Shown here: positions 46,042 through 64,000 of the stretch, piece after piece
How positions within the stretch are numbered: the stretch's first letter is position 1
How the letters are laid out: each line of letters opens with the position of its first letter
Assembly: GCA_973895155.1 (NCBI GenBank)
Contig: OZ316897.1
Location: 6,275,327-6,339,326, forward strand
DNA from: Marsupella aquatica
Taxonomy: Eukaryota; Plantae; Marchantiophyta
DNA length: 64,000 bases
Direction of reading: 5' to 3'
The notes under the pieces: generated by a model
Databases searched by the model: none
Seen by the model: only the letters and a program-made list of their open reading frames with translations
What the model was told of the DNA's origin: nothing
Position numbers and translations under genes: made by a program

Positions 46042-46338
46042 TCAAAAATTGTCCAAAGTGTGGAACAAAGACAACATGGATGTTGTTGTTTCACATCTAG
46101 GCCCCAAATTTGTCTTAGTATGGAAGTAACCAAGGATCTTTTACTTTTGGCTGTTTGCCCTTTTGTGACTTTCAAAAATTGTCTAAGTGTGAAACAAAGA
46201 CAACATGGATGTTGTTGTTTCACATCTAGACCCCAAATTTGTCTTAGTATGGAAGTAACCAAGGATCTTTTACTTTTGGCTGTTTGCCCTTTTGTGACTT
46301 TCAAAAATTGTCTAAGTGTGAAACAAAGACAACATGGA
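46042..46338. repeat. 129-bp tandem repeat, ~2.3 copies, near identical
   Basis: ACAACATGGA at 46071, 46200 and 46329. Confidence 0.9.
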
Positions 46339-52020: not shown

Positions 52021-53395
52021 AGAGCGCATAGGGTGAACTGCGGCTAGGCGTGAGTGCACACAGTGAGCCAATAGAGCTTGGTTGGGTGCGCCTAAGTTAT
52101 GATGTTGCAGGTACGTACTTTAATCTGGTGGAGTTTTCTATTTCTCTCTCTTGGTTCTTTTGAACTGCTAGTGTTGTCCCGGTGTTGTCATGTTCATCGT
52201 TCTCCATTTGCACTCGTGAAGGTAAGGACAGGGCTCATTCGTCTGCATGTCTTTGAACTTTAGTTGCTACGAATGCACCCCACTTTGCTTCCTTGTCATT
52301 TGAAAGATCTGTCACCTTCTTTGCAAAGAACCTCTCTTACCTTGCATCTCATCGTTGCTTTGATCAAATTAGAAGGCTGTCTACTACCATGCATCTCATT
52401 GTTGCCACCAGACTGAAGATCCTCTATTACCACGTAGCTTCATTGATGATTTAAAAAACTCTAATGCAATCTGTACATATACCATGGCAGTATGTAAAAC
52501 ATGAATAGAAAATCATGCAATATGAAATCTGGAGAGCAAAGAAGAGGAATATCATCCTAACTGTGTAGGCTATCAGTACACAGACCTTAATAATCTCTTC
52601 CAGAAGGTCCTTGATGTGCATAATGTGGACTTGTTCTATGATTAATTGGGTTACAAAGGTGAAATCTGCCCCCTTCCCAGTGAGGCATTCGCAGTGCCCT
52701 TGATTAGCAGCAGCTGCCTTGGCTTTGTCACTTCAGTTTGAAGACAGAAGCAGATCATTTAACACTTCACCATAATGCCAAATAATTACAGTAGACAGGC
52801 CTGAAGTATTATCGGACAAAACATTTTAACTCACAAATAAATATGCACAAAGGGTAATTAAACCTCAGATGTCTCCCATTCTTGCTCAGATTAGAAACCC
52901 TGGAGTTCCATAGGCTGTCGAAGTCACTTGAGGCTCTCACATCCATTTGGCACTGTGTTCTACAGCTTGTCAAACAAAAAGAGGAAAGTGCAGCTTGTTC
53001 AGCCTGATCTGTTTAAAGTCTATAATCTAGAACCAATTGTGACGCCGCCGGTACGGCGGTTAATGAGTGATTCAGTCTAACTGCGCTCGGCACGCGCATT
53101 AGGTGGGTCTTAGGCCGCTATTATTAGCATAACGACAGTATTTAGGTAATCATTAGGGGTAGGACATCATTAGGCAATAAGGGGGACTTCAGGTTCGGGC
53201 TGGCGGCGGGTCGCTATTCGCACACCCGGGTTACGAGCGTGGAGGGGCCCCTCCCTCGGGTCCGTATAACGAACTTAAGGAAGCGGCCACTGACGCACGC
53301 TGACTCAGACCGGCGGAGTGGCCGGTACACCACAAGCGTGAGCGGTTCAACCTATGGGCGTCGAGGAGACGTCGGGGATCGACAAGCCCTCAAAG

Positions 53396-53402
53396 TATAA
53401 AA
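53396..53402 (+). promoter_or_regulatory. TATA box of the LTR promoter
   Basis: TATAAAA followed by a pyrimidine-rich leader ~100 bp before ATG 53504; positionally conserved in the 31278 copy. Confidence 0.65.
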
Positions 53403-53503
53403 GGGGAGCCAACCCTTTGTAGTGCACCAGTCCATCAGTCCGCGCGCCAGCTTCGACCCCAGCTCTCTCGTTCTCTCTAGGTCGCCACTACTATCTCCTC
53501 TGA

Positions 53504-56145
53504 ATGTCGCACACGATCCTCTCCAGCTCGGCCATTCGATTCTGGACGCAGTTCCTATCTACCGGAAGGCACTTGGCCGATTCATTGAAACACGCCAACC
53601 CGCGCCGATACGAGATCGAACGCGAATACGAGAGAGCCATCCACCTAGCAGGACGACACCACTACGTCCTTAACTTTGACTACCCGTCTCAGAGCGAGCT
53701 TTACCGACCAGCTGAGGTATCTGGGTACTTCTTCAACGGAGACAAATATATCGGGTTCTGGGAAGCATTGCTTCGGCTTCCGGACGAGGTTTTCAATATC
53801 CCGGGTACAATCGACCTGCAGCGACATCACTTCGACCACATCCCTGCCCAGGTTCGGGCTGTCATTAACGGCGAGTCCAGTACCAACCGTTCGACAAGGG
53901 CGTCCACACTCGCTTCGGAGAACTTCTACCAGCACCTACAGAGCTTCATGGGAACTCGGCCATCAACCAACATGACCAACTCAGCCGGACCCGTACCCGT
54001 ACCCGTACCCGTGCCCATGCAACCTCAGCTTCAGCTTCAGCCTCAGCCGCGGCCTAGCCAAACCCCACCACCTATCACCCAGCCAGCACAGGTACGCTCC
54101 ATCATCAACGCTGTGGATCTTAGCGATGACGACGAGGCTACCCCACCCTTGACCAGGCGGCCCAGAGGAACAAGCGCTCGGGGGGCCGACACTATATCGT
54201 CCCCACCCCCTGCTCTGACCCCAGGAGCGGCCCCAACAGACAACATGGTGACCGTGGCCGCCCCGGGCCCGTTACCAACCGCAGTGGCACTCCCCAGGCC
54301 CGATCGGGAGGATGGGGAAGTATCACCTTCCCCGAGTCAGTCACGGGGAAAGAAGAGGAAGGAATCCGCCAGTGCATCCGGGTTACCGTTGGCCACGGTA
54401 GCCGTAGCCAAGGTAACGATGCATCGCATGGGGGAAAACGTTCACAGCAACATCCTCCATCCCAAGCATGCGGTGTACCTGAAGACTCAGGGATTTGAGC
54501 ACCTCGCCTCTCTCCCCTGGAACACTTGTAGGTACTACGGGGAGGACATGACAGAATTCGTCAAGAATTATGACGACGTACGTCAACAGACTCGGCTGCG
54601 GGGAAGGAATATGTCCCTCACAGAAGAACGGCTCAAGATGATCTTCGGGTTACCCGAAGGTGACCATCGAGTCGAATCACGGGCTCCCGGGGGCAAGGGG
54701 GCCAAGTACCAATCTTCAAGTTTTCCCTCAGAGGGATCAGTGGACAACGGGTTCGTGATGAGGACCTGCCTCATGCCCGAGATAGCTGAGCGGCTGGAGT
54801 TCCAAAGGTACGCTCTCCACATGATGGAACCCCGGGGGGAGATCTCCGCCGCCCAGGTCATCCAGGTCGAGAACTATCGACCTAGGAAATGGGCGTCGTA
54901 CTTCGCTAAGAAATTCCATGAAGAGATGGAGCGGCGAAGGAAGACGCTGTACATTGGCGGGAAAGCGTATTTCGCTAGCCACATCGAAATCATTCTTGAG
55001 TGGTACGCCCGGTTTGATCGACGAACCCTTCCCCGCATCAACGTTACAAAGCTGGTCCCAGCTAGGTGGGTTTTTCCGGCATTGGAGAGACGGCCCCAAC
55101 TCGAGGCCTGAAGTCCAGTGGACACGCCAGCTTCACCCACCCCACCTCCACAAATAGCTGTAATCGTAACCGAGGAGGCGCCGGAGGGGTCGGTCGTCGC
55201 AACCGTTGATGCGACCCAACTAGCCGGGCTAAGTACAGAAGTTGGTACGGCAGAGGTCTTACCCGAACCCGGGTCTCCCAAGGACCCGCCGGTGGCAATT
55301 CCGGAGAACCGGACATCGCTGCAGGAGGACACTCCAGCCCCTTCCAACGTTATGTCCCCAGGGCTGGACGTCACTGCCCCGGCCCCTGCGCGTGTTGATG
55401 TCTGCCCGTGCCCAAATCCGGACAGGCACAACTTGGACCACCCGGAACTCTTCGTACAGGGTACGTTTCTGAACGGGCTTCTGGGAGATTTCTCTCATCA
55501 AATTGCCCGGGATACCGGGGAGTTCGTGGCCCGGAAGGTAGCCTGTTTCTTCAATCAGGAGTTGGTTGCCGCCGTAAAGGCAGGTCGGGCCCAGTCGGAG
55601 GCCCTTCAGAGGATAGAGCGGTACCGGGTGGAGTCCGTGTACCTAAAGAACGAAGTGGCGGCTCAAGAGGCTGAGCTTCTGCAACTACGACCCAAGGTTG
55701 CAGCCGCCGATGAGTTGTTAGCAAAGGCGTACGCTCTTACCGCCCTAGCGAACAGGCCAAAGCTGGGAACGAGGCCGAGATTACACGACTCCGGAACCAG
55801 ATTGACAGTTTGAAGAAACAAGTTGTCACCTGGCAGAAAGACCTGGAGGAGGCCGAGGAGCGAGCCCAGCGGGACGCGACGGAGATAGCCACGCTGCAAG
55901 CCGAGATGGCGCGGCTCCAAACCGAGGCCGAGAAGCAGGACCAACTGGCGAGTAAACTGACGAGCGACGCCCAGCAGCTGGAGGAGGCATGTTAGGAGGC
56001 AGCAGAGGAGATGGACGCGGCGAGGCGAGAGAACGAATCTCTGCTGGACCAGGTCCAGCTCCTCAAAGCGGACAATGACAGGCTTCGAAGGCAGCGGGAT
56101 GGCCGTTCCCATTCAGGCGGCTCTGGCAAGCGTGCCAGGCATTAG
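53504..56145 (+). pseudogene. LTR-encoded protein, ancestrally ~880 aa: N-domain, Pro-rich linker, plant-transposon (PMD/Athila-ORF-like) domain, coiled coil
   Basis: 53504-55111 and 55118-55813 are the same frame separated by one TGA. A 1-nt shift near 55748 joins the coiled-coil frame (EQAKAGNEAEITRLRNQIDSLKKQ...), which has one TAG (55993) and ends at 56145. YLKTQGFEHL...EFVKNY...LRGRNMSLTEERLKMIFGLP resembles plant retroelement extra-ORF domains. Confidence 0.75.
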
Positions 56146-57672
56146 CGGCGGAGTAGGAATAGATTAGGATTAGGATTGGCTTAGTCAGGCTCTTGGGACA
56201 GGCACCTGCCTTAGGTACAGCAGCGCTGCCCTGCTGTCCAGCCTGCGTAGATTAGGATCTTCTAATAATACACAGCCGTTTTCCGGCCTGACTGTCAGCT
56301 TAGTTAGGACCTTGGTCAGCGGATCTTCGGCGGGAGGACGCCCCGTTCCTCGGCTCTTAGTATTTAGTGCACCCCTCGGTAGAGGCAAGGGGGGGTTTTT
56401 AGTTTCAGAGTCGGACATCCGCGGGACATGCGGGGAGTCCCGACCTCTGGGAATGACAGAGTACCAAGGGGAGGGGGTAGGACTAAGCTCGCCGGGCGAG
56501 TGCGGAGCCAGGCTCTGTTGTAGTGTGCACCCTTGGCCTTGAACCTGTGCATTCCAGGGCTGTCGTGTCAACTAAGTGTACGCATATGTTCCCTTTGTAG
56601 TAAAATCCTTTCCCATCATTTTTCCTTCGTGTAAATCGAGATTGTATGCATGTGTGCGCATATGTGTGTGGGTTTCTCGTATATGGGTGGCAGCGCCGAG
56701 CCGAACGCACTACCCGAGACGTGCACAGGGTGCAGCCTGCGGGTAAGTGGTTGCGAGCACGGGTTGAGGACCTGTATCATCGAATCTGGATCGAAGGCAG
56801 ACAGCACGAAGGCTTAGAAGCCCTTAAGCCGGGGTCGATCCTGCTATCGACTAAGGTACGTTCCGGCGGCGGAACACAAACCATACCTAGGAGGTGTCCG
56901 TATTTAGCAGTATGCGTACTTAGCGCTAGTTTACGAGAATAAGGTGCATTACGTGCTTCCCTTCCTGCCCGAACCCTCAGATTTACGAGGGATGTGCCCG
57001 TCTAAGCTGAAGTCTGAGTTAAGGCCGAAGCCTACGACGTGACACCAATAGTTGCCAACTGAGGTATCTTAAGTTCTGGCTCAGACAACTTGAATGGCTA
57101 GTTTTGTTTCATGGTTAACTTATATCCATATTTCCATGCTTGACTGCAATTATGTGTTGTATGTACAAGTTTGCTACTGTGCCTTCTTATTCTCCTTCTT
57201 CCTCTAGTGTATTTGGTCTTATTGAATGTTTTATTGTAGATCTTCATGTCCCAGTCGTCCTTTCTCTATTCAGTCTCCTCCAAGGAATCAACTTCCAACA
57301 GGAATGCACTTGGCTTGAGTTTATTTCCTTGAGCTCAGACAACCAGCTTTTTCAGCTATTAATATGCTAGACTCGACTCTTCTTGCAGGATGAATTTGTT
57401 TAGGGTGTAGTGGAAGCATCTCAGAAGCTTCAGCAATATACAGTCAAGGTTCACGTTCAAAAATTGTGGAAGGAGCAGACCTCAATCAACTATCACCACT
57501 TGCTGCATCTCGAGTTCCATCAGAGATTAAAGGTATGCTTATGTTAAAGATGCTGTCAATAACTATGAATCTGCTGTTCAATGTAGAATGGATGTTGAGG
57601 GGATGCAAAATGGATGCTGAGTGAATGCATCTGTACGTTGTGCAGAGGTAAATCACTATCCGACAAGTCAGG

Positions 57673-58338
57673 ATGGCTTCTAATGTGCCAAGGATTGACA
57701 TATTTTCCCATAAGGAGCACCACCGCATGGATCCCCCTTGCTGTTTCTTTTGTGATGAGACGGATGATGTGGTCTTTTGTGATGGGCCTTGTAGTAGACA
57801 TTTTCACTTTGTTGGTGGAAAAGGTATGCAGGGACCTGCTTGCACTCCTGTAACACTGCCTAAAAACAATGATTGGAGGGCACCATGGGTTTGTGAATTG
57901 TGTGCTGCCAACAGAGCTAGATGCTTTGCTTGTGGACTCATTGGCAGATTTGAACATCCCACAACACAAGAATCTCTTGTGCTCCATTGTGCCCATCCTG
58001 ATTGCTTTTCTCATTACCATCCTGGCTGCCTTAGGGTGCTACTTGTGGTTGGGGCACTGCCTCAGAGGTCTCATCCAGCAAGTCCAAACAGCCTAATGTG
58101 CCCAAGGCATTTTTGTGAGTACTGTAAAGTGTACAAGGATGGTATAAAAGACTTTGTACAGTGTCGGAGGTGCCCTCGCAGTTGGTGTCATGATGAGACA
58201 CCTGGGGGGGTGAAGCACCTCAAGAGGTGTGTGAAGGGCAGGGACCATTGGGATGTGGAAGGGTGGCGTTTTATTTATTGTCATAGGCATGCAATACCTG
58301 AGGGGGAAGTGGTTCCTGTGCAGCCTCATACCTCTTAG
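57673..58338 (+). CDS. Stand-alone EDM2/NSD-type composite PHD-finger protein, 221 aa, transposon cargo
   Basis: Intact ORF: CFFCD..VFCDGPCSRHFH..C..WVCELC..RCFACG..HCAHPDCFSHYHPGCL..CPRHFCEYC..VQCRRCPRSW..W..FIYCHRHAI....P...H, collinear with the EDM2 PHD region including its LIYCxxHxI...PxxxH tail as I recall it. Confidence 0.85.
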   Translation: MASNVPRIDIFSHKEHHRMDPPCCFFCDETDDVVFCDGPCSRHFHFVGGKGMQGPACTPVTLPKNNDWRAPWVCELCAANRARCFACGLIGRFEHPTTQESLVLHCAHPDCFSHYHPGCLRVLLVVGALPQRSHPASPNSLMCPRHFCEYCKVYKDGIKDFVQCRRCPRSWCHDETPGGVKHLKRCVKGRDHWDVEGWRFIYCHRHAIPEGEVVPVQPHTS

Positions 58339-58618
58339 AGGCTATGAGATATGTTGGTAGAATTGCTTTGGTAAAGGCCTGGTACAAATCAAGCGAACTT
58401 ATTCATTGGACTAATCACATGTGAACAATGATAGCAAGATTTGTTGTTCTTGCCTGGTCTTCAAATTTGGATACCAAAACCTTTTTTGAACTATTTTGGA
58501 GTAATCTCTAATACTATTTGTATTGTTTTGTTCACTGTGCTATATGGCAGGTTCCTTATGTGACTGTGAAAATCGTATATAGAACCCTTGATGCTTTAAC
58601 CTGAACAAATTGATTGAA

Positions 58619-61600
58619 ATGGCTTCCCAATTTGTAAAGCTACTTCACAAGAAAATGGATGTGGTGACTGATGGGAAAGATGAAGAACCTATAGCTGTGT
58701 TGGCCTTCAAAGAAGGACAAACTTTGGCTGATTTCCGAAACCGAATTCCTGATTGGTTGATTTTGATTTTGATTTCTGGGATTATAGGCTTCCTGGTCGA
58801 ATGAAGGTCAAGAGTGAGAAAATGACTGAGCTGTCTGAATTGGATGGAAAAGTTGCTGTCATTGAACAAATTGGATCCTTGCCTACTAGCAGGGCAGAGT
58901 TTCCATCAGTTTCTGCTGCTGTCACCCAATCGGTTGCAGTGGATTCTTCACAGGGTGAACAATTGCAAGAAATTCCCCCTGTGAGAGCTTCTTTTGAGTC
59001 TCTTTTGATGTCTAAGGCAGCTGTCAAAGTTTGGAATGATGAATTTATAAGACTAGAAAAGTGGATTCACAAGAATGGTTATAAAAATCATAATTGGAGG
59101 ATTCGAACATGGGATGAAGGACAGGATGTGAGAGGCCATCTAGAGTGTCTTGAGTGCAGAGTGGTCTATGGGAGAGCAGACAATTCCCAAGATAGGAAGT
59201 CAATTGCTAATCTATTTAGCAATTTTAAGACCAAGCACCTTGCCTTTGCTAAACACAAAGACAATTACTGCAGGAGAAGGGGTATTGCTATGATTGGGGT
59301 GAAGCCCTCAGATCTTGCACAGAAGCCTGAGTTTGATTATGAGGGGGCTATAGCAACTGGCCTAGAGATAGTAAAGAATCTGAATGTTGAGTGTGGAGGT
59401 GATGATGAGCTATTTCATGTGCCCCCTGTGCCTGGATTAGCCAATAATGCAAACAAGTGGTTCCTTTATAAGGTTCGTTGTAAAATCTGTGGGACAATCA
59501 TGGATTTGGTTTGTAAGAAAGGGACTTTGGATCACAACCTGAGAACCCACTTGGTCAGTCGGGGTCACTTGGATGTAGTTGAAGCCAGAGAAAATACTGC
59601 TGAACTTGCATTGAGATCTGGAAAGAGGGGCAGACCAAGGAAGCCAGATGAGAGGGATCAACATCCTTCACAAAATTCAATTTTAAAATTCTTCAAGGAG
59701 GATGCTTCCAATGCAAGCAGCAGCTCTGGTACAGGTGGGTCTATAGGCATTGATGTGGGCTTAAGTTTGCTCTGTTGGGGAATATGGGATGAATGTGTAG
59801 AGTGGAAGAATGTGAAGTATGTTGTGAAGGGTATCTTGCATGATCAGCGTGGTGGACATGTATGGGATTTAGATGCTGCAGTCTCTATTGATGTCTACAA
59901 TCCTAGCACAAGTTCTATTGTACATATAAAAGGACTATTTAGGCATAGAGATTGCTCTAGGCTGTCCTTGTATGGTGGGGGATTTCTGAACCTAACTTGC
60001 AGTAGATGTCATGCTATAACACTAGAAGATGACTTTCGTGGGCGGGTGCACAGGGAAGCGGAGGCTTTAGCAAAGAGAGGGGAAAGAAGCACAGAGGGTG
60101 GTTTGAATGCACGTTATTTGACACGTCCAGAGTTGACCACACAGCTGCATGGTTTGAATGTTAAGAGAAGAAAGGAGAGATGGTTGTTGGCACTACAGAC
60201 TCAGAAAGTGTGTGCCCTTAGTACTAGGAAGAGAAAATTGCAGGAACTGTTAGGAGTAGCTGCAGACAGAAAAGATTTGAGACTTTTTCTAAGGAGTATT
60301 GTCAATGGTCATAGGAATGGTGCATTTGGTGGAAAAGAAGGTCTGTGGGATTTCTTGAAGGATGTAGGTAGAAATTTGGAGAGAAGTGCAAGGGGGTTTC
60401 GCTACAGTAAGAAAACAAAAGCCATAGCTCAAGCTATGTTTCAATATGGGGGCCGGCAGGTGGCCCATGTTTTTGCAAGGAACTTAGCTGGGCCAAGCCT
60501 GAAGACACTAAAACGAGATAGAGCAAAATTTGTTCAATTTCGTGTTGGAATCAGGCCAGAAACATTCAAAGAGGTGGCTAGAATTTTGTTTGCTGCAAAG
60601 GAGATGTTGGGAATTCAAGGGGATGTACCTGTCATGCTTGCAGAGGATGAAACCAGGATCAAGGAAAGCCCAAGGTATGTTTGCATATTATAGCACATAA
60701 TGATGCAATTGGAGTTGAAGACTATTTGTGAGACATATAGTTCTATGAACTCTTTGGAACTGACTTCATTAACATTGGGCTCTCTGCAGGTGGGAGGCCA
60801 AATATGACACTCTGATTGGCTTCTGTGGCCATAAGGATGGGCACACTTGTGAATTTGGATTAGAAATTCTTGTAGGTGACGGTGAGGATGGCTATAACAA
60901 GATTGTAAACACATTTCAGGATTTTAACAAGGGCATGTATGCTAGAGTTGTCATTGTGAATCCATTGCATGTTGGAATGCCAAAGTTGGCCCTTTGTGCT
61001 ATATCAACCTGTAACAAATTCAAGGCAGAATGGGTACGAGAGCATTGGGTGCAATTGAAGGAATCTTGGGATGTGCACTGTAGAGACTGTGTAGGTCCTT
61101 TGCTTGGGCATGCTAGTGATGGTGATGCAAGACGCAGGAAATTGATGTTAGAAGACTACAGAGGAGCAAATGGCTCTTACCCTAGATTTTCTGTAGGGTG
61201 GGAAGGATGGCCTTACTCAGTTGCCATATTGCCTAATGGGGACCTCTATGGTTTTGGTGATCAAGACCAACCTCACAATGGGAAAAAGTTGATTAACCCA
61301 CTAGATCGAGTGTCCTCAATAATGGCACTTGGAGACCAACATGCTTCTCTGTTTCATGTTTGTAATGTGTATAATCATTACCCAATTCATCAACATGGAT
61401 TGAATTGGGATGATGTGAACAGATCTGACCGTCAGAATTGGGCTGGTCCTCAAAGGATAGCATCAGACAAGGTGCGTGAATGTTTAACAGATCTACATGC
61501 AAGAACTGATATGTTGTATGAACGAAGCTTGGGGACAGAGTTGTATCTGCAGATCTGTGCAGATTATATTGACATTTTCTACTCCCAGAGACATGATCTA

Positions 61601-63193
61601 AGGACTAGAGTGAAATTGGCAGGGAAAGTTTCTTGGTTCTTTCGATTGTGGAGGTTGTGGTTAAGGTATGGTGATCATGCTGTAGGTGGAGATGTTGCTT
61701 CACATACAGAGAAAAATATGATTTCAATCCAAGCTTTTCATGATGTTAATATGTCTTGCCAGTTCATTGTGTTGCTTATATGTGCATTTCGTGATAAATT
61801 TTCTCACTTGTGTATTCCATTTCATGAGTTGGGTTCTGATTGTTGTGAGATCTTTTTCAGCAAGGTAGGTGGAATGAGTGGCCATGAGAGGAATTATGAT
61901 TTTGGCTCTTTGTTGGATAGTGCTGTTGGGTTGAATCGTCTTGCTGGATTAGAATGTGGACCAGAGGGCTTGAAAGTAGCTCGATCACATAAGAAGCAAG
62001 ATCATGTGTGGGCCAAGCTTCATCCTTTACTTGAAGGTGAAGATGCACCTAATCTTTTTTATTACTCTGAAGTGCAAACTAATGAGTTGGTGGTTGCAGC
62101 CTTGAAAGAAGGATTTGAAGAAGCAAAAGAGCTCCTTAGAAGGTTGCAAATGTCTCCCCGAAGTGATCTGCCAGCATCAAGAAAGCGGTGGTGGACTCAC
62201 CCTTGGCATGTGGAAGTTGAAACATGGCCAGATTCAGCTGTCATAGCAGAGGCAGTTATTGTTGACGATTCTGAAGACCATGTAGAGCATAGATCTCCAA
62301 TTGGACCTCGTCCAGAAGGAGAGTTTCATGAATTTGAAGACCCTGAGGAAGATCTAAATCGAATTGATGCATGGTTGACAGATGAGCTAACCATTCCTGA
62401 TGATGTTTTGCAGGATGGGGCTGAGTTAGATGTACCAGAATCTCATTCTGTAGAGGTAGATACTTTGGGGCATGAGGTTCGTCATGTGTTGTCATCTGTT
62501 GTGGCTGATCTTACAGAGTCTATTCAAAGCCCTCTACAGGAAAAGAGGAAGGTGTTGCCTACAGTTACCTATGAAGGCAGAACAATTTACAAATCTACTT
62601 TGGTGAGTCAACTAGTGGGCAACCCTCATTTGTCCAAGGATAGGCTCACAAGGGTGAAACAAGTGGCATATTATAACCTTGGTAAGAGGAAACAATGTGA
62701 TCCAAATACTGTGACCTGTTTTGTTGATGTTGGGAGTGATTGTGGAGTAGCATTTGAATGTGCTAATGCTGCAGGCCCTTCTACAAGATCAAAGAAGGGG
62801 AAAGGTAAGGGAAGAGGTAAAGCTAGGACTCAGGAACCAGAAGTTCAAGCCAAGAAAGAATTTTGGCTTGGTCGGATTATGATGATGAGACAGAAAGTTA
62901 AGGGACAATGGACTAGAGTGAGATCTGCTATTGATTTGCTTGACAGGCCTACACCTCCTCATGGACACATAGGGAGTATTTGTCAGTTTTTATTTAATTG
63001 GTATAAGCCAACAAGCTCAAGCAAGGTTGAATTCACTTATGATACGACTGATTTACAATGGATTGATATAGAAATGGTGATGACTAATGTTACTCTGACC
63101 ATGAAACAAGGGATTGGCTTAGTGTATGTGTTAGATCGTGTTGACAAACAAGCTTTGGATACTTATCTAGAGACCATGTCTAGAGTTGAATGA
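58619..63193 (+). CDS. P-element/THAP9-superfamily DDE transposase, ~1490 aa, one intron, one 1-nt frameshift near 58752
   Basis: Intron 60675-60789 (AG|GTATGT...TGCAG|G) joins the two long ORFs in frame. P-type motifs: RYS...GPSLKTLKR; LAEDET (D1); ASDGD (D2); DQPHNGKKLIN (DxxH); DRQNW insertion region; GSDCCEIFFSKV (E). Confidence 0.85.
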
Positions 63194-63330: not shown

Positions 63331-63824
63331 TACACTCATTCAGATTGTTAACTCAATTTCCTTTTGGTGCACCTACCTTTCACATGAGACTGTAAGCATA
63401 GGAGATTGCAAATATAAACAACTCATATTGTATATTGCTGAAGCTTCTACTAGAATTGAGATTCTTAGTGGAAGCATCAACACTATATACTATAAGTTTT
63501 TTATGATGAGACATCATGAATGCCAAAGGAGCATAGGAGGGCTTGACTAAGACTCGAATAATCTTGACAAACACTAAAAAAAGGTGCGCATTTGAAAGAA
63601 CTTTTCTTTTCTTAGTAAGGTATGTTTAAATGAAGGCAAAACTTTACTTAACCTTTTTTAGGGGTCAAAATTTAAGGATTTGGAATTCTTCTAAGTATGA
63701 TAGGGAGGGAGAAAAAAATATTTTACTTAATAAGTTAGGGTCACAAGGGACCAAAACGTCGAGCGTGGTATGGGGTCCTCTGTATACTGAGGCCCCCGAG
63801 GCCACGTCTCATTGCCCACTAGTC

Positions 63825-64000
63825 TTAGAGATGTTATGGTTGTCTTAGAGATAGTATTTGGAGAAGGCACTTGTCAAGTACGGGATGGAGAATACAAAAC
63901 CAGTTGGTAATCCATTGGCTCCCCACTTCAAACTCTCGAAGAATGATTGCCCTTCTAGTGAGAGTGATAGACTGACAATTAATTAGGTTCCCTATGATAG
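63825..64000 (+). mobile_element. Copia RT fragment, probably continuing the element whose 5' LTR is at 48459
   Basis: LWLS*R*YLEKALVKYGMENTKPVGNPLAPHFKLSKNDCP...VPY. Confidence 0.85.

What the first reader, a model, noticed from the sequence alone, without database searches (positions are those of the whole stretch)
57673..58338. Transposon carries a stand-alone EDM2-type PHD reader: candidate TE-encoded anti-silencing or targeting module
Seen: an intact 221-aa Cys/His-rich ORF inside the TSD-bounded element, 280 bp upstream of the transposase, on the same strand and similarly CpG-poor. Established: EDM2 uses a composite PHD region to read H3K9me2-containing marks and acts with ASI1 and AIPP1 to allow full-length transcription through intronic heterochromatin. 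VANDAL Mutator elements provide a precedent for TE-encoded anti-silencing proteins (VANC). Inference: the element captured only the reader module, without EDM2's other domains, and kept it intact. It could recruit or decoy the ASI1-AIPP1-EDM2 complex, protect transposase mRNA from premature polyadenylation, or steer integration to particular chromatin.
Basis: partly seen in the sequence, partly recalled or inferred. Interest (0 to 1): 0.92.

Follow-up and report, generated by a model that had tools for sequence, protein, structure and literature searches.

The report
Transposon-borne PHD histone-reader gene

Summary
The ORF is real. It runs 57673-58338 (+), 221 aa, ends 280 nt before the transposase ATG, and is CpG-poor like the rest of the element. 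It encodes a triple PHD array of the NSD/EDM2 type by Pfam and by fold. It is not a one-off capture. A homologue with about 58% protein identity sits at the same spacing before the same transposase N-terminus in other samples. Synonymous sites are saturated while pN is only 0.28. Several distinct contig variants of the ORF occur in each of four sequencing runs. The neighbouring enzyme has the P-element transposase fold (Z 19.9), lacks THAP, and has one 115-nt intron. This copy lacks one T after 58752, which shifts the frame; this may be an assembly error. I could not confirm "TSD-bounded": I found only a 20-nt inverted repeat. The gene is not universal, since a sister lineage and two Riccia loci lack it. 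A more distant homologue precedes a probable CACTA transposase. It is not an EDM2 family member, because it has the PHD module only, on a long, unresolved branch. Anti-silencing or targeting roles remain untested, and no RNA data exist. The scan already reported this gene family on other DNA of this genome (for example s1-776024 and s1-763459).

The parts
57673..58338 (+). PHD accessory gene, 221 aa. Finger 1 is aa 23-78 (57739-57906), finger 2 is aa 81-146 (57913-58110), and finger 3 (a PHDvar/C5HCH-like variant) is aa 148-206 (58114-58290).
   Evidence: ORF. Pfam PHD_NSD 4.6e-8 plus weaker first and variant NSD fingers. Model pLDDT 79.8. Best folds are the NSD1/2/3 PHD5-C5HCH tandems: Foldseek E 2e-4 and VIA Z 6.1 with 92-93 residues aligned at 30% identity. 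pN 0.27-0.29 against saturated pS 0.76-0.78 versus L003 and L004.
58339..58618 (+). 280-nt spacer between the PHD stop codon and the transposase ATG.
   Evidence: It does not align with L003 or L004 although both flanking ORFs do. The long pieces listed in it are near-identical (0-2 differences). Some copies have a 61-nt deletion at 58340-58402.
58619..60674 (+). Transposase exon 1: a conserved N-terminal motif, a region with C2H2-like Cys/His motifs, and the first acidic motif (EDET). This copy lacks one T after 58752, which shifts the frame by -1.
   Evidence: N-terminus is conserved with L001 and L004, which both read through in one frame. Contigs of all four runs carry an extra T behind 58752 (table 4). 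Donor AG|GTATGT at 60674/60675.
60675..60789 (+). 115-nt GT..AG intron, phase 2.
   Evidence: Frame change between ORF2 and ORF3, with the conserved residues (WEAKYDTLIGFCG) recovered only after splicing. The same interruption occurs in L001. The joined protein was not built or searched.
60790..63193 (+). Transposase exon 2: the P-element-type RNase H core with its insertion domain (ORF3 aa 1-343), a disordered linker, and a C-terminal beta-rich domain.
   Evidence: VIA Z 19.9, rmsd 4.0, 295 residues aligned to Drosophila P element transposase 6p5a_A residues 252-569. Foldseek probability 1.00. Invariant S61, G63, D64 and G300, D302, E305 across 23 homologues. Homologues in Riccia at 45-49% identity.
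62687..63190 (+). C-terminal beta-rich domain of the transposase (ORF3 aa 585-752). BAH-like by fold at a weak level only.
   Evidence: VIA Z 5.0-6.4 to DNMT1 BAH1, ORC1/ORC1b BAH and DIM2. No Pfam BAH match. Atlas search blank.
57423..57442 (.). Left arm of the perfect 20-nt inverted repeat, probably subterminal.
   Evidence: E 4e-5 against the whole left part of the window. Assembly contigs of three runs break at 57423-57425 (table 8).
63429..63448 (.). Right arm of the 20-nt inverted repeat.
57408..57420 (.). 13-nt direct repeat (second copy at 63466-63478) outside the inverted repeat.
   Evidence: It is offset by 2 nt on the left and 17 nt on the right, so it is not a clean TSD.
57045..57422 (.). 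CpG-poor sequence upstream of the 20-mer. Its membership in the element is uncertain. The part from about 57290 seems to be shared, with indels, by other copies.
   Evidence: CpG o/e 0.24. Loose ends at 57376/57379 resemble window 57290-57375 by my own comparison (table 7). The neighbouring repeat ends at 57044/45.

Best explanation
The ORF is a genuine, selected accessory gene of one sub-lineage of a THAP-less, P-element-type DNA transposon that is abundant in this probable liverwort genome.

It encodes only a triple PHD zinc-finger module of the NSD/EDM2 type. Its last two fingers have the fold of the NSD PHD5-C5HCH tandem, which binds the histone H3 N-terminal tail.

Most likely mechanism (inferred, not shown): the protein is made from its own transcript and binds H3 tails. 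Finger 1 has the acidic 'CDE..D..FCDGPC..FH' pattern. From my memory of other PHD fingers, this pattern suggests K4-unmethylated H3, and the NSD3 tandem also accommodates K9me3. The protein would act in trans for the element by coupling it to a chromatin state. I think the likeliest single role is licensing or tethering the transposition machinery to a particular chromatin, as RAG2's PHD finger does for RAG1 and as chromodomains do for chromoviruses.

My odds:
- Real accessory gene of the element: about 0.85.
- It works by binding the H3 tail: about 0.6.
- Tethering or licensing rather than anti-silencing: about 0.35 against 0.25.
For: Shown:
- Intact ORF with the invariant ligand columns kept.
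- Pfam PHD_NSD above its cut-off.
- NSD PHD5-C5HCH fold, including the NSD3 complexes with H3 and H3K9me3 peptides.
- Homologues with about 58% protein identity lie 288 nt upstream of the same transposase N-terminus in L004. The contigs of P0002 and P0216 have a downstream same-strand gene at the same spacing, but their DNA could not be fetched.
- Only the ORFs, not the spacers, align at this divergence.
- pN 0.27-0.29 against saturated pS 0.76-0.78.
- At the variant places listed inside the ORF, 1-14 distinct contigs per run cover it (up to 13-14 at 58146 and 58215), much as for the transposase. No indel is listed inside the ORF.
- A clade-specific motif in finger 3 (W171, C172, D174, P177, G178, H182) is invariant among the transposon-borne proteins.
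- The neighbouring enzyme has the P-element transposase fold at Z 19.9.

Suggestive for a chromatin theme:
- The transposase C-terminus is weakly BAH-like.
- Distant relatives of the transposase end in a PTM/DIR17 Tudor domain.
- A 31%-identical stand-alone PHD gene precedes a probable CACTA transposase in L005: Transpos_assoc at 2.1e-5 (25.1 bits, below the 27.7 cut-off).
Against: - No expression data of any kind: no RNA run holds the sequence.
- No binding data. The complex prediction of the PHD protein with ORF3 gave no verdict.
- The gene is absent from the 1.1 kb upstream of the transposase in the sister lineage L001, and from 8 kb around two Riccia sorocarpa homologues. The transposase lineage can persist without it.
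- Its presence on two unrelated transposase superfamilies argues for a host-directed role such as anti-silencing rather than a specific partnership with one enzyme.
- Element ends and a TSD were not found, so physical inclusion in the mobile unit is inferred from linkage.
- This copy's transposase carries a frameshift.
Confidence: 0.5

Rival explanations
1. Anti-silencing or decoy factor. The stand-alone reader occupies repressive H3 marks on copies of the element, or titrates or recruits the host ASI1-AIPP1-EDM2 machinery. The methylated element would then still produce full-length transposase mRNA.
For: - The whole element is strongly CpG-depleted (o/e 0.13-0.24), as expected of long-term methylated DNA.
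- The module is the one EDM2 uses as a chromatin-binding protein at heterochromatic introns (PMC7529245).
- Related PHD genes sit on two unrelated transposon superfamilies, which fits a role directed at the host rather than at one transposase.
- The transposase gene is long (about 4.5 kb) and contains an intron.
Against: - The parts of EDM2 outside the PHD array are absent. Whether the array alone can contact host partners is unknown.
- The protein is only 28-31% identical to EDM2-like proteins and has a remodelled third finger.
- No expression or methylation data.
- Sister lineages lack the gene.
Confidence: 0.25
2. The ORF is not a separate gene. It is an upstream exon that is spliced onto the transposase mRNA, giving a PHD-transposase fusion.
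For: Same strand and only 280 nt apart. PHD-transposase fusions are known in other eukaryotes (bioRxiv 10.1101/2021.11.30.470311). No RNA data exclude it.
Against: - Each homologue ends in its own stop codon 10-15 residues after the last zinc ligands.
- The transposase has its own conserved ATG-proximal N-terminal motif in lineages with and without the PHD gene.
- Spacer sequence is not conserved.
- No GT..AG joint was seen, but the runs behave as DNA, so this says little.
Confidence: 0.08
3. Self-regulator. The reader damps or restricts transposition, for example by directing the element's own copies or the transposase to silent chromatin. This would limit damage to the host in the way truncated P-element repressors limit P activity.
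For: The family is high-copy yet persists. The predicted reading of K4-unmethylated or K9-methylated H3 points to silent chromatin (and my inference from finger 1).
Against: No direct evidence. Selection at the level of the element for a pure repressor is hard to maintain. Lineages without the gene also persist.
Confidence: 0.1
4. Neutral hitch-hiker. A host gene fragment was captured once (Pack-type) and amplified with the element without serving it.
For: Gene capture by DNA transposons is common in plants. The gene is missing in related lineages.
Against: The frame and ligand columns are kept across lineages whose synonymous sites are saturated, with pN/pS about 0.37. There are invariant clade-specific residues. 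Position and spacing are conserved. No indel is listed in the ORF among many contigs.
Confidence: 0.04

Closest known systems
Plant EDM2 / EDM2-like proteins. These include the liverwort proteins with a C-terminal array (Marchantia Mp1g03210, Riccia R1sor_003797, Calypogeia) and the stand-alone Marchantia Mp4g03050.
   Same: The same three-finger array in the same order (PHD-1st_NSD, PHD_NSD, PHDvar_NSD). These are the best long sequence matches: E 5e-24 to 2.5e-21 for the best two liverwort proteins and about 1e-11 for named EDM2.
   Different: No RFD-like N-terminal domain and no C-terminal part. Only 28-31% identity. The third finger is rearranged ('WCHD...H' in place of 'WH..C'). It sits on a very long branch with unresolved attachment. 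It is encoded by a transposon, not at a host locus.
NSD1/2/3 PHD5(PHDv)-C5HCH tandem
   Same: Best structural match for fingers 2 and 3: Foldseek E 2e-4 to 2e-3, VIA Z 5.7-6.1, about 90 residues aligned, about 30% identity. The NSD3 tandem is solved with H3 and H3K9me3 peptides.
   Different: No SET or PWWP context. An extra first finger is present. The Z score is modest because the domain is small. Binding specificity is untested.
RAG2 PHD finger with RAG1 (the Transib-derived recombinase)
   Same: A separately encoded partner next to a DDE transposase gene carries a PHD finger that reads a histone H3 mark and guides the enzyme. The RAG2 H3K4me3 reading is from the abstract of PMC5175335, listed.
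   Different: Unrelated PHD type and unrelated transposase superfamily. No Kelch domain here. No interaction with the transposase has been shown (one search gave no verdict).
Chromatin-reader domains recruited by transposable elements: chromovirus chromodomains, and the PHD- and Chromo-transposon fusions surveyed across eukaryotes
   Same: The general principle that elements acquire readers, PHD and Chromo being the commonest (10.1101/2021.11.30.470311).
   Different: Those cases are mostly single-polypeptide fusions. My three literature searches found no description of this.
VANC of VANDAL Mutator elements, and accessory ORFs of two-gene DNA transposons (the PIF/Harbinger Myb-like protein, Spm TnpA)
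   Same: An accessory protein encoded beside the transposase that serves the element. This comparison rests on my own knowledge of these systems.
   Different: No sequence or fold relationship. Those proteins bind DNA, whereas this one is a predicted histone-tail binder.
Drosophila P element / THAP9 transposases
   Same: The neighbouring enzyme shares the RNase H core plus insertion-domain fold (Z 19.9). It has DET / DGD / D..E motifs in the expected order.
   Different: No THAP domain and no Pfam TNP-like match. It has N-terminal C2H2-like Cys/His motifs, an extra C-terminal beta-rich domain and an accessory PHD gene. Neither an 8-bp TSD nor TIRs were found in this copy.

Membership tests
NSD/EDM2-type PHD array (Pfam PF23011 + PF22908 + PF23004) | Central PHD_NSD finger scores above the curated cut-off | tested here: met
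   33.7 bits against a cut-off of 23.9, aa 81-146.
NSD/EDM2-type PHD array (Pfam PF23011 + PF22908 + PF23004) | Flanking first finger and variant finger, in that order | tested here: inconclusive
   PHD-1st_NSD 17.0 bits and PHDvar_NSD 15.3 bits, both below their cut-offs of 27, but in the right order and positions. The alignment with 39 relatives keeps the invariant ligand columns. The fold of fingers 2 and 3 matches the NSD PHDv-C5HCH tandem.
EDM2 family (plant EDM2/ELP proteins) | RFD-like (DNMT1-RFD) domain N-terminal to the PHD array | tested here: not met
   The 221-aa product is the array alone. The RFD domain is found in the EDM2 orthologues P0098, P0113 and P0136 but not here.
EDM2 family (plant EDM2/ELP proteins) | Long C-terminal region after the array (total length about 1200-1400 aa) | tested here: not met
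   A stop codon falls 15 residues after the last ligand.
EDM2 family (plant EDM2/ELP proteins) | Binding to H3K9me2-marked chromatin and partnership with ASI1/IBM2 and AIPP1/EDM3 | not testable with these tools
   Background from PMC7529245.
EDM2 family (plant EDM2/ELP proteins) | Phylogenetic placement inside the land-plant EDM2 clade | tested here: inconclusive
   Quick IQ-TREE of 141 PHD regions. The transposon-borne proteins form one clade (SH-aLRT 99) on a 2.64-long stem in a basal polytomy, outside a weakly supported (83) clade of 118 plant sequences. The careful tree search did not finish.
P-element superfamily DNA transposon | RNase H-like catalytic core interrupted by the P-type insertion (GTP-binding) domain | tested here: met
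   Z 19.9, rmsd 4.0, 295 residues aligned to 6p5a_A residues 252-569. The next enzymes score far lower (RAG1 5.8, Hermes 5.0). Foldseek probability 1.00.
P-element superfamily DNA transposon | Conserved acidic triad | tested here: inconclusive
   The EDET motif at the end of exon 1, D64 (with D62 nearly invariant) and E305 are conserved in 23 homologues and lie in the expected order. Residue-level superposition was not available.
P-element superfamily DNA transposon | THAP DNA-binding domain, or Pfam TNP-like sequence signatures | tested here: not met
   No Pfam match for either long ORF or for 23 homologues. The language-model neighbours are TNP-like clusters at 0.87-0.88 only, which is a lead and not a test.
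P-element superfamily DNA transposon | Terminal inverted repeats flanked by an 8-bp target-site duplication | tested here: not met
No such pair within the window. There is only a 20-nt inverted repeat, probably subterminal. The ends may be disrupted or lie outside the window.
Transposon-encoded anti-silencing factor (VANC-like) | Homology to VANC, or demonstrated loss of methylation at cognate copies | not tested

The most novel reading that the evidence does not exclude
The element carries a two-part chromatin-reading system of its own: the stand-alone triple-PHD protein, plus a BAH-like (Tudor in distant relatives) C-terminal domain on the transposase. This would mirror the host's pairing of a BAH protein (ASI1) with a PHD protein (EDM2). 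Together the two would recognise heterochromatic H3 tails. They would then either direct integration into silent 'safe-haven' chromatin or secure full-length transcription through the element's own methylated body. The PHD gene would be a portable module exchanged between P-like and CACTA transposons.
Probability: 0.12. Interest if true: 0.85.

Novelty: new variant of a known kind. Interest (0 to 1): 0.6.

Why it matters
Transposons are known to borrow chromatin readers, but mostly as domains fused to integrases or transposases. Here a free-standing reader gene of the NSD/EDM2 type has been kept under selection. It lies beside a P-type transposase, a superfamily that standard domain models do not detect in this lineage. 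A relative lies beside a probable CACTA transposase.

If the protein reads heterochromatic H3 tails, it offers a direct experimental handle on how DNA transposons choose or escape chromatin states in early-diverging land plants. The system has natural 'with' and 'without' lineages to compare. It could be tested in Marchantia.

The finding is not new to this scan. Several earlier reports describe the same gene family elsewhere in this genome.

Tried and rejected
- **PDB sequence searches.** Searches with the PHD ORF, with ORF3 and with a 23-sequence ORF3 profile gave nothing meaningful.
- **Pfam.** No match for the transposase ORFs or for their homologues.
- **C-terminal domain of the transposase.** No Pfam BAH match. 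The Atlas search was blank.
- **TSD and TIR scan.** The exhaustive scan produced only an artefact inside the palindromic core of the 20-mer.
- **Other copies in the window.** There is no second copy of the element or of the PHD ORF elsewhere in the 64 kb.
- **Metagenome scans.** The scan with the PHD alignment confirmed nothing. The scan with the 20-mer returned seven unrelated contigs that share only 21-25 nt, which are chance matches.
- **Exact-sequence look-up.** The window's PHD protein is not on record.
- **Missing DNA.** The contigs of P0002 and P0216 could not be fetched, so only their gene layouts were used.
- **Sequencing runs.** No RNA run holds the stretch. The four runs that were laid behave as genomic DNA: the intron and spacers are covered and there are no GT..AG joints. 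Expression and splicing therefore stay untested.
- **Complex prediction.** The PHD protein with ORF3 scored 0.05 against a mark of 0.34. This is no verdict, and counts neither for nor against binding.
- **Phylogeny.** The tree did not resolve the donor of the PHD module, and the careful search did not finish in time.
- The spliced transposase (exon 1 plus exon 2) was never joined. Each exon was searched by reference on its own.
- **Left end at 57376-57379.** I considered this and rejected it. The differing 'flanks' there resemble window 57290-57375 with indels, so they look like diverged copies rather than insertion sites.
Full report
**1. Observation**

- It matches Pfam PHD_NSD above the curated cut-off (4.6e-8, 33.7 bits, aa 81-146).
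- It has sub-threshold matches to the NSD first finger (aa 24-46) and the NSD variant finger (aa 148-206). Together these give the three-finger order typical of NSD and EDM2 proteins.
- In an alignment with 39 relatives, the invariant Cys/His ligand columns are all kept.
- The transposase's conserved N-terminal coding sequence starts at ATG 58619, 280 nt after the ORF ends and on the same strand.
- CpG observed/expected is 0.13 in the ORF, 0.18-0.20 in the transposase ORFs and 0.24 in the spacers. The GC-rich repeat that abuts at 57044/45 has 0.90.

I could not confirm 'TSD-bounded'.

- The only significant terminal symmetry is a perfect 20-nt inverted repeat at 57423-57442 / 63429-63448. A 13-nt direct repeat lies outside it at unequal offsets.
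- An exhaustive scan for a TSD of 3-10 bp next to matching termini found nothing.
- Other copies appear to share sequence to the left of the 20-mer. This is my reading of the loose-end consensus sequences. The 20-mer is therefore probably subterminal.

**2. The neighbouring enzyme**

- The two long ORFs (58753-60693 and 60935-63193) have no Pfam match.
- They belong to one gene. A GT..AG intron at 60675-60789 (115 nt, phase 2) restores conserved residues. The same interruption is present in a related genomic contig, L001.
Each was searched by reference on its own.
- ORF3 has homologues in Riccia sorocarpa and R. fluitans at about 45% identity, and in many unnamed assemblies.
- Its AlphaFold model (pLDDT 72) matches the Drosophila P element transposase over residues 1-343 with Z 19.9, rmsd 4.0 and 295 residues aligned. 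RAG1 and Hermes follow at Z 5-6.
- The motifs EDET, DGD and D..E are conserved.
- There is no THAP domain. The N-terminal exon has C2H2-like Cys/His motifs instead.
- The enzyme is therefore a P-superfamily transposase by fold. Sequence models miss it. This agrees with earlier scan notes s1-771422 and s1-762761.
- This copy lacks one T after 58752. Contigs in all four runs carry that T, and L001 and L004 read through in frame. The transposase frame is therefore broken near codon 45, unless this is a homopolymer error in the assembly.

**3. Is the PHD gene part of the family?** Three lines of evidence say yes.

- **Conserved linkage.** In contig L004, a homologue with about 58% protein identity lies 288 nt upstream of the same transposase N-terminal motif. 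The contigs of P0002 and P0216 show a same-strand downstream gene at the same spacing, but their DNA could not be fetched.
- **Selection.**
  - Between the window, L003 and L004, synonymous sites are saturated (pS 0.76-0.78) while pN is 0.27-0.29.
  - Frames and ligand columns are intact.
  - At this divergence only the ORFs align, not the spacers.
  - A rearranged third finger, with W171, C172, D174, P177, G178 and H182 invariant, is specific to the transposon-borne clade.
- **Copy number.**
  - Four public runs from two organisms hold 468-2172 contigs at 90% identity or more over 57000-62999.
  - At the variant places listed inside the PHD ORF, 1-14 distinct contigs per run cover it, reaching 13-14 at 58146 and 58215. 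This is much as for the transposase.
  - No indel is listed inside the ORF.
  - The tool warns that contig depth cannot rank regions, so I rely on contig counts and positions.

**4. Limits on that conclusion**

- The gene is not universal in the transposase clade. L001 (64% identical in ORF3) has no PHD ORF in the 1.1 kb before its transposase ATG.
- Two Riccia sorocarpa loci have none within 8 kb.
- The window holds no second copy.

**5. What the protein is like**

- The model (pLDDT 79.8) matches the NSD1/2/3 PHD5-C5HCH tandems best. Foldseek gives E 2e-4 to 2e-3. VIA gives Z 5.7-6.1 with about 90 residues aligned at about 30% identity. The matches include NSD3 bound to H3 and to H3K9me3 peptides.
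- An exhaustive phmmer search found 164 relatives.
  - Best after the stand-alone homologues are liverwort proteins of 619-768 aa with a C-terminal array (Riccia, Marchantia Mp1g03210, M. paleacea, Calypogeia).
  - The stand-alone Marchantia Mp4g03050 also ranks high.
  - EDM2 orthologues, with an RFD domain plus the array, follow at about 1e-11.
- Identity to all of these is only 28-31%.
- A quick tree puts the transposon-borne proteins on one long branch (2.64 changes per site) in a basal polytomy.
- 'EDM2-type' is therefore right for the module. Membership of the EDM2 family fails on the other defining domains. Capture from EDM2 itself is not demonstrated.

**6. A wider pattern**

- A 220-aa relative (P0089, 31% identical) lies about 420 nt upstream of a gene with the CACTA-type Transpos_assoc domain. 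The match is 2.1e-5 at 25.1 bits, just under the 27.7 cut-off. This partly confirms earlier scan notes that the same kind of reader rides on an unrelated superfamily (s1-763459, s1-327412).
- The transposase's own C-terminus (aa 585-752) resembles BAH domains, but only weakly: Z 5.0-6.4, with no sequence support.
- Two distant relatives of the transposase end in a PTM/DIR17 Tudor domain.
- These points hint at a chromatin-reading theme. They are leads, not findings.

**7. Mechanism**

Shown: a conserved, multi-copy, stand-alone triple-PHD gene is linked to a P-type transposase.

Inferred: it binds H3 tails and serves the element. I rank the possible roles as follows.

- Chromatin licensing or tethering of transposition comes first (a RAG2-like logic).
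- Anti-silencing or decoy action comes second. The strong CpG depletion and the gene's presence on two superfamilies favour this reading. EDM2's known role at heterochromatic introns is from PMC7529245.
- Self-regulation, a fused upstream exon and neutral capture follow. Neutral capture is largely refuted.

No expression data exist, and the complex prediction gave no verdict.

**8. Novelty**

- Recruitment of PHD and Chromo readers by transposons is documented across eukaryotes, mainly as fusions (10.1101/2021.11.30.470311).
- Three literature searches found no description of a stand-alone NSD/EDM2-type PHD gene in P-like or CACTA elements of liverworts.
- I class it as a new variant of a known kind.
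- The scan has already reported the same gene family on other pieces of this genome. This window adds one more apparently near-intact copy. It also adds independent checks of fold, linkage, selection and lineage-specific absence.

Noticed in passing
window 58752/58753: This copy lacks one T that contigs of all four public runs carry, and that L001 and L004 imply. The loss shifts the transposase frame near codon 45. It could be a real mutation or a homopolymer error in the assembly.
   Followed up: partly
window 62687-63190 (ORF3 aa 585-752): The C-terminal beta-rich domain of the transposase resembles BAH domains (DNMT1 BAH1, ORC1/ORC1b, DIM2) at Z 5.0-6.4 only. There is no Pfam or Atlas support. 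An earlier first-reader note (s1-771491) raises the same idea for another copy.
   Followed up: partly
proteins P0058 (aa 1066-1119) and P0061 (aa 1160-1217), distant relatives of ORF3: These transposase relatives end in a PTM/DIR17-type Tudor domain (Pfam 9.7e-10 and 1.6e-8). A different chromatin-reader fold therefore sits at the position of the window's C-terminal domain.
   Followed up: partly
L005:3648-5691: A 31%-identical stand-alone PHD gene lies about 420 nt upstream of a gene with the CACTA-type Transpos_assoc domain (25.1 bits, cut-off 27.7). This points to the same kind of accessory gene on a second transposon superfamily.
   Followed up: partly
L001:1-1200; L007 and L008 (Riccia sorocarpa): Close and distant relatives of the transposase have no PHD gene upstream. 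The accessory gene is therefore specific to a sub-lineage, either gained or lost.
   Followed up: yes
window about 53000-57044: A GC-rich block (57% GC) with nearly undepleted CpG (o/e 0.90) ends sharply at 57044/45. Contigs of run X3 end at 57044/45 with differing continuations. It holds ORFs of 535 and 231 aa without Pfam matches. It may have inserted into the left part of the P-like element or next to it.
   Followed up: partly
window about 63860-64000: A decayed fragment that looks like Ty1/copia reverse transcriptase lies on the + strand. It carries the 'KPV..PLA.HFKLS' motif with in-frame stops upstream. I identified it by eye and did not test it.
   Followed up: no
window 57249 -> 62325 (joint in runs X2 and X4): One contig in each of two runs joins 57249 to 62325, skipping 5075 nt. 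This may be an internally deleted, non-autonomous derivative. Other joints are 57441->57672 (230 nt, three runs) and 58340->58402 (61 nt, three runs).
   Followed up: no
window 58186-58218 (aa 172-182 of the PHD protein): In the transposon-borne clade the third finger reads 'WCHD...PG...H' where EDM2-like proteins read 'WH..C'. The new residues are invariant within the clade, which suggests a remodelled zinc site.
   Followed up: partly
window 46045-46338: A tandem repeat of a 129-nt unit, with two full copies at 95% identity plus the start of a third, lies inside a 127-aa minus-strand ORF.
   Followed up: no
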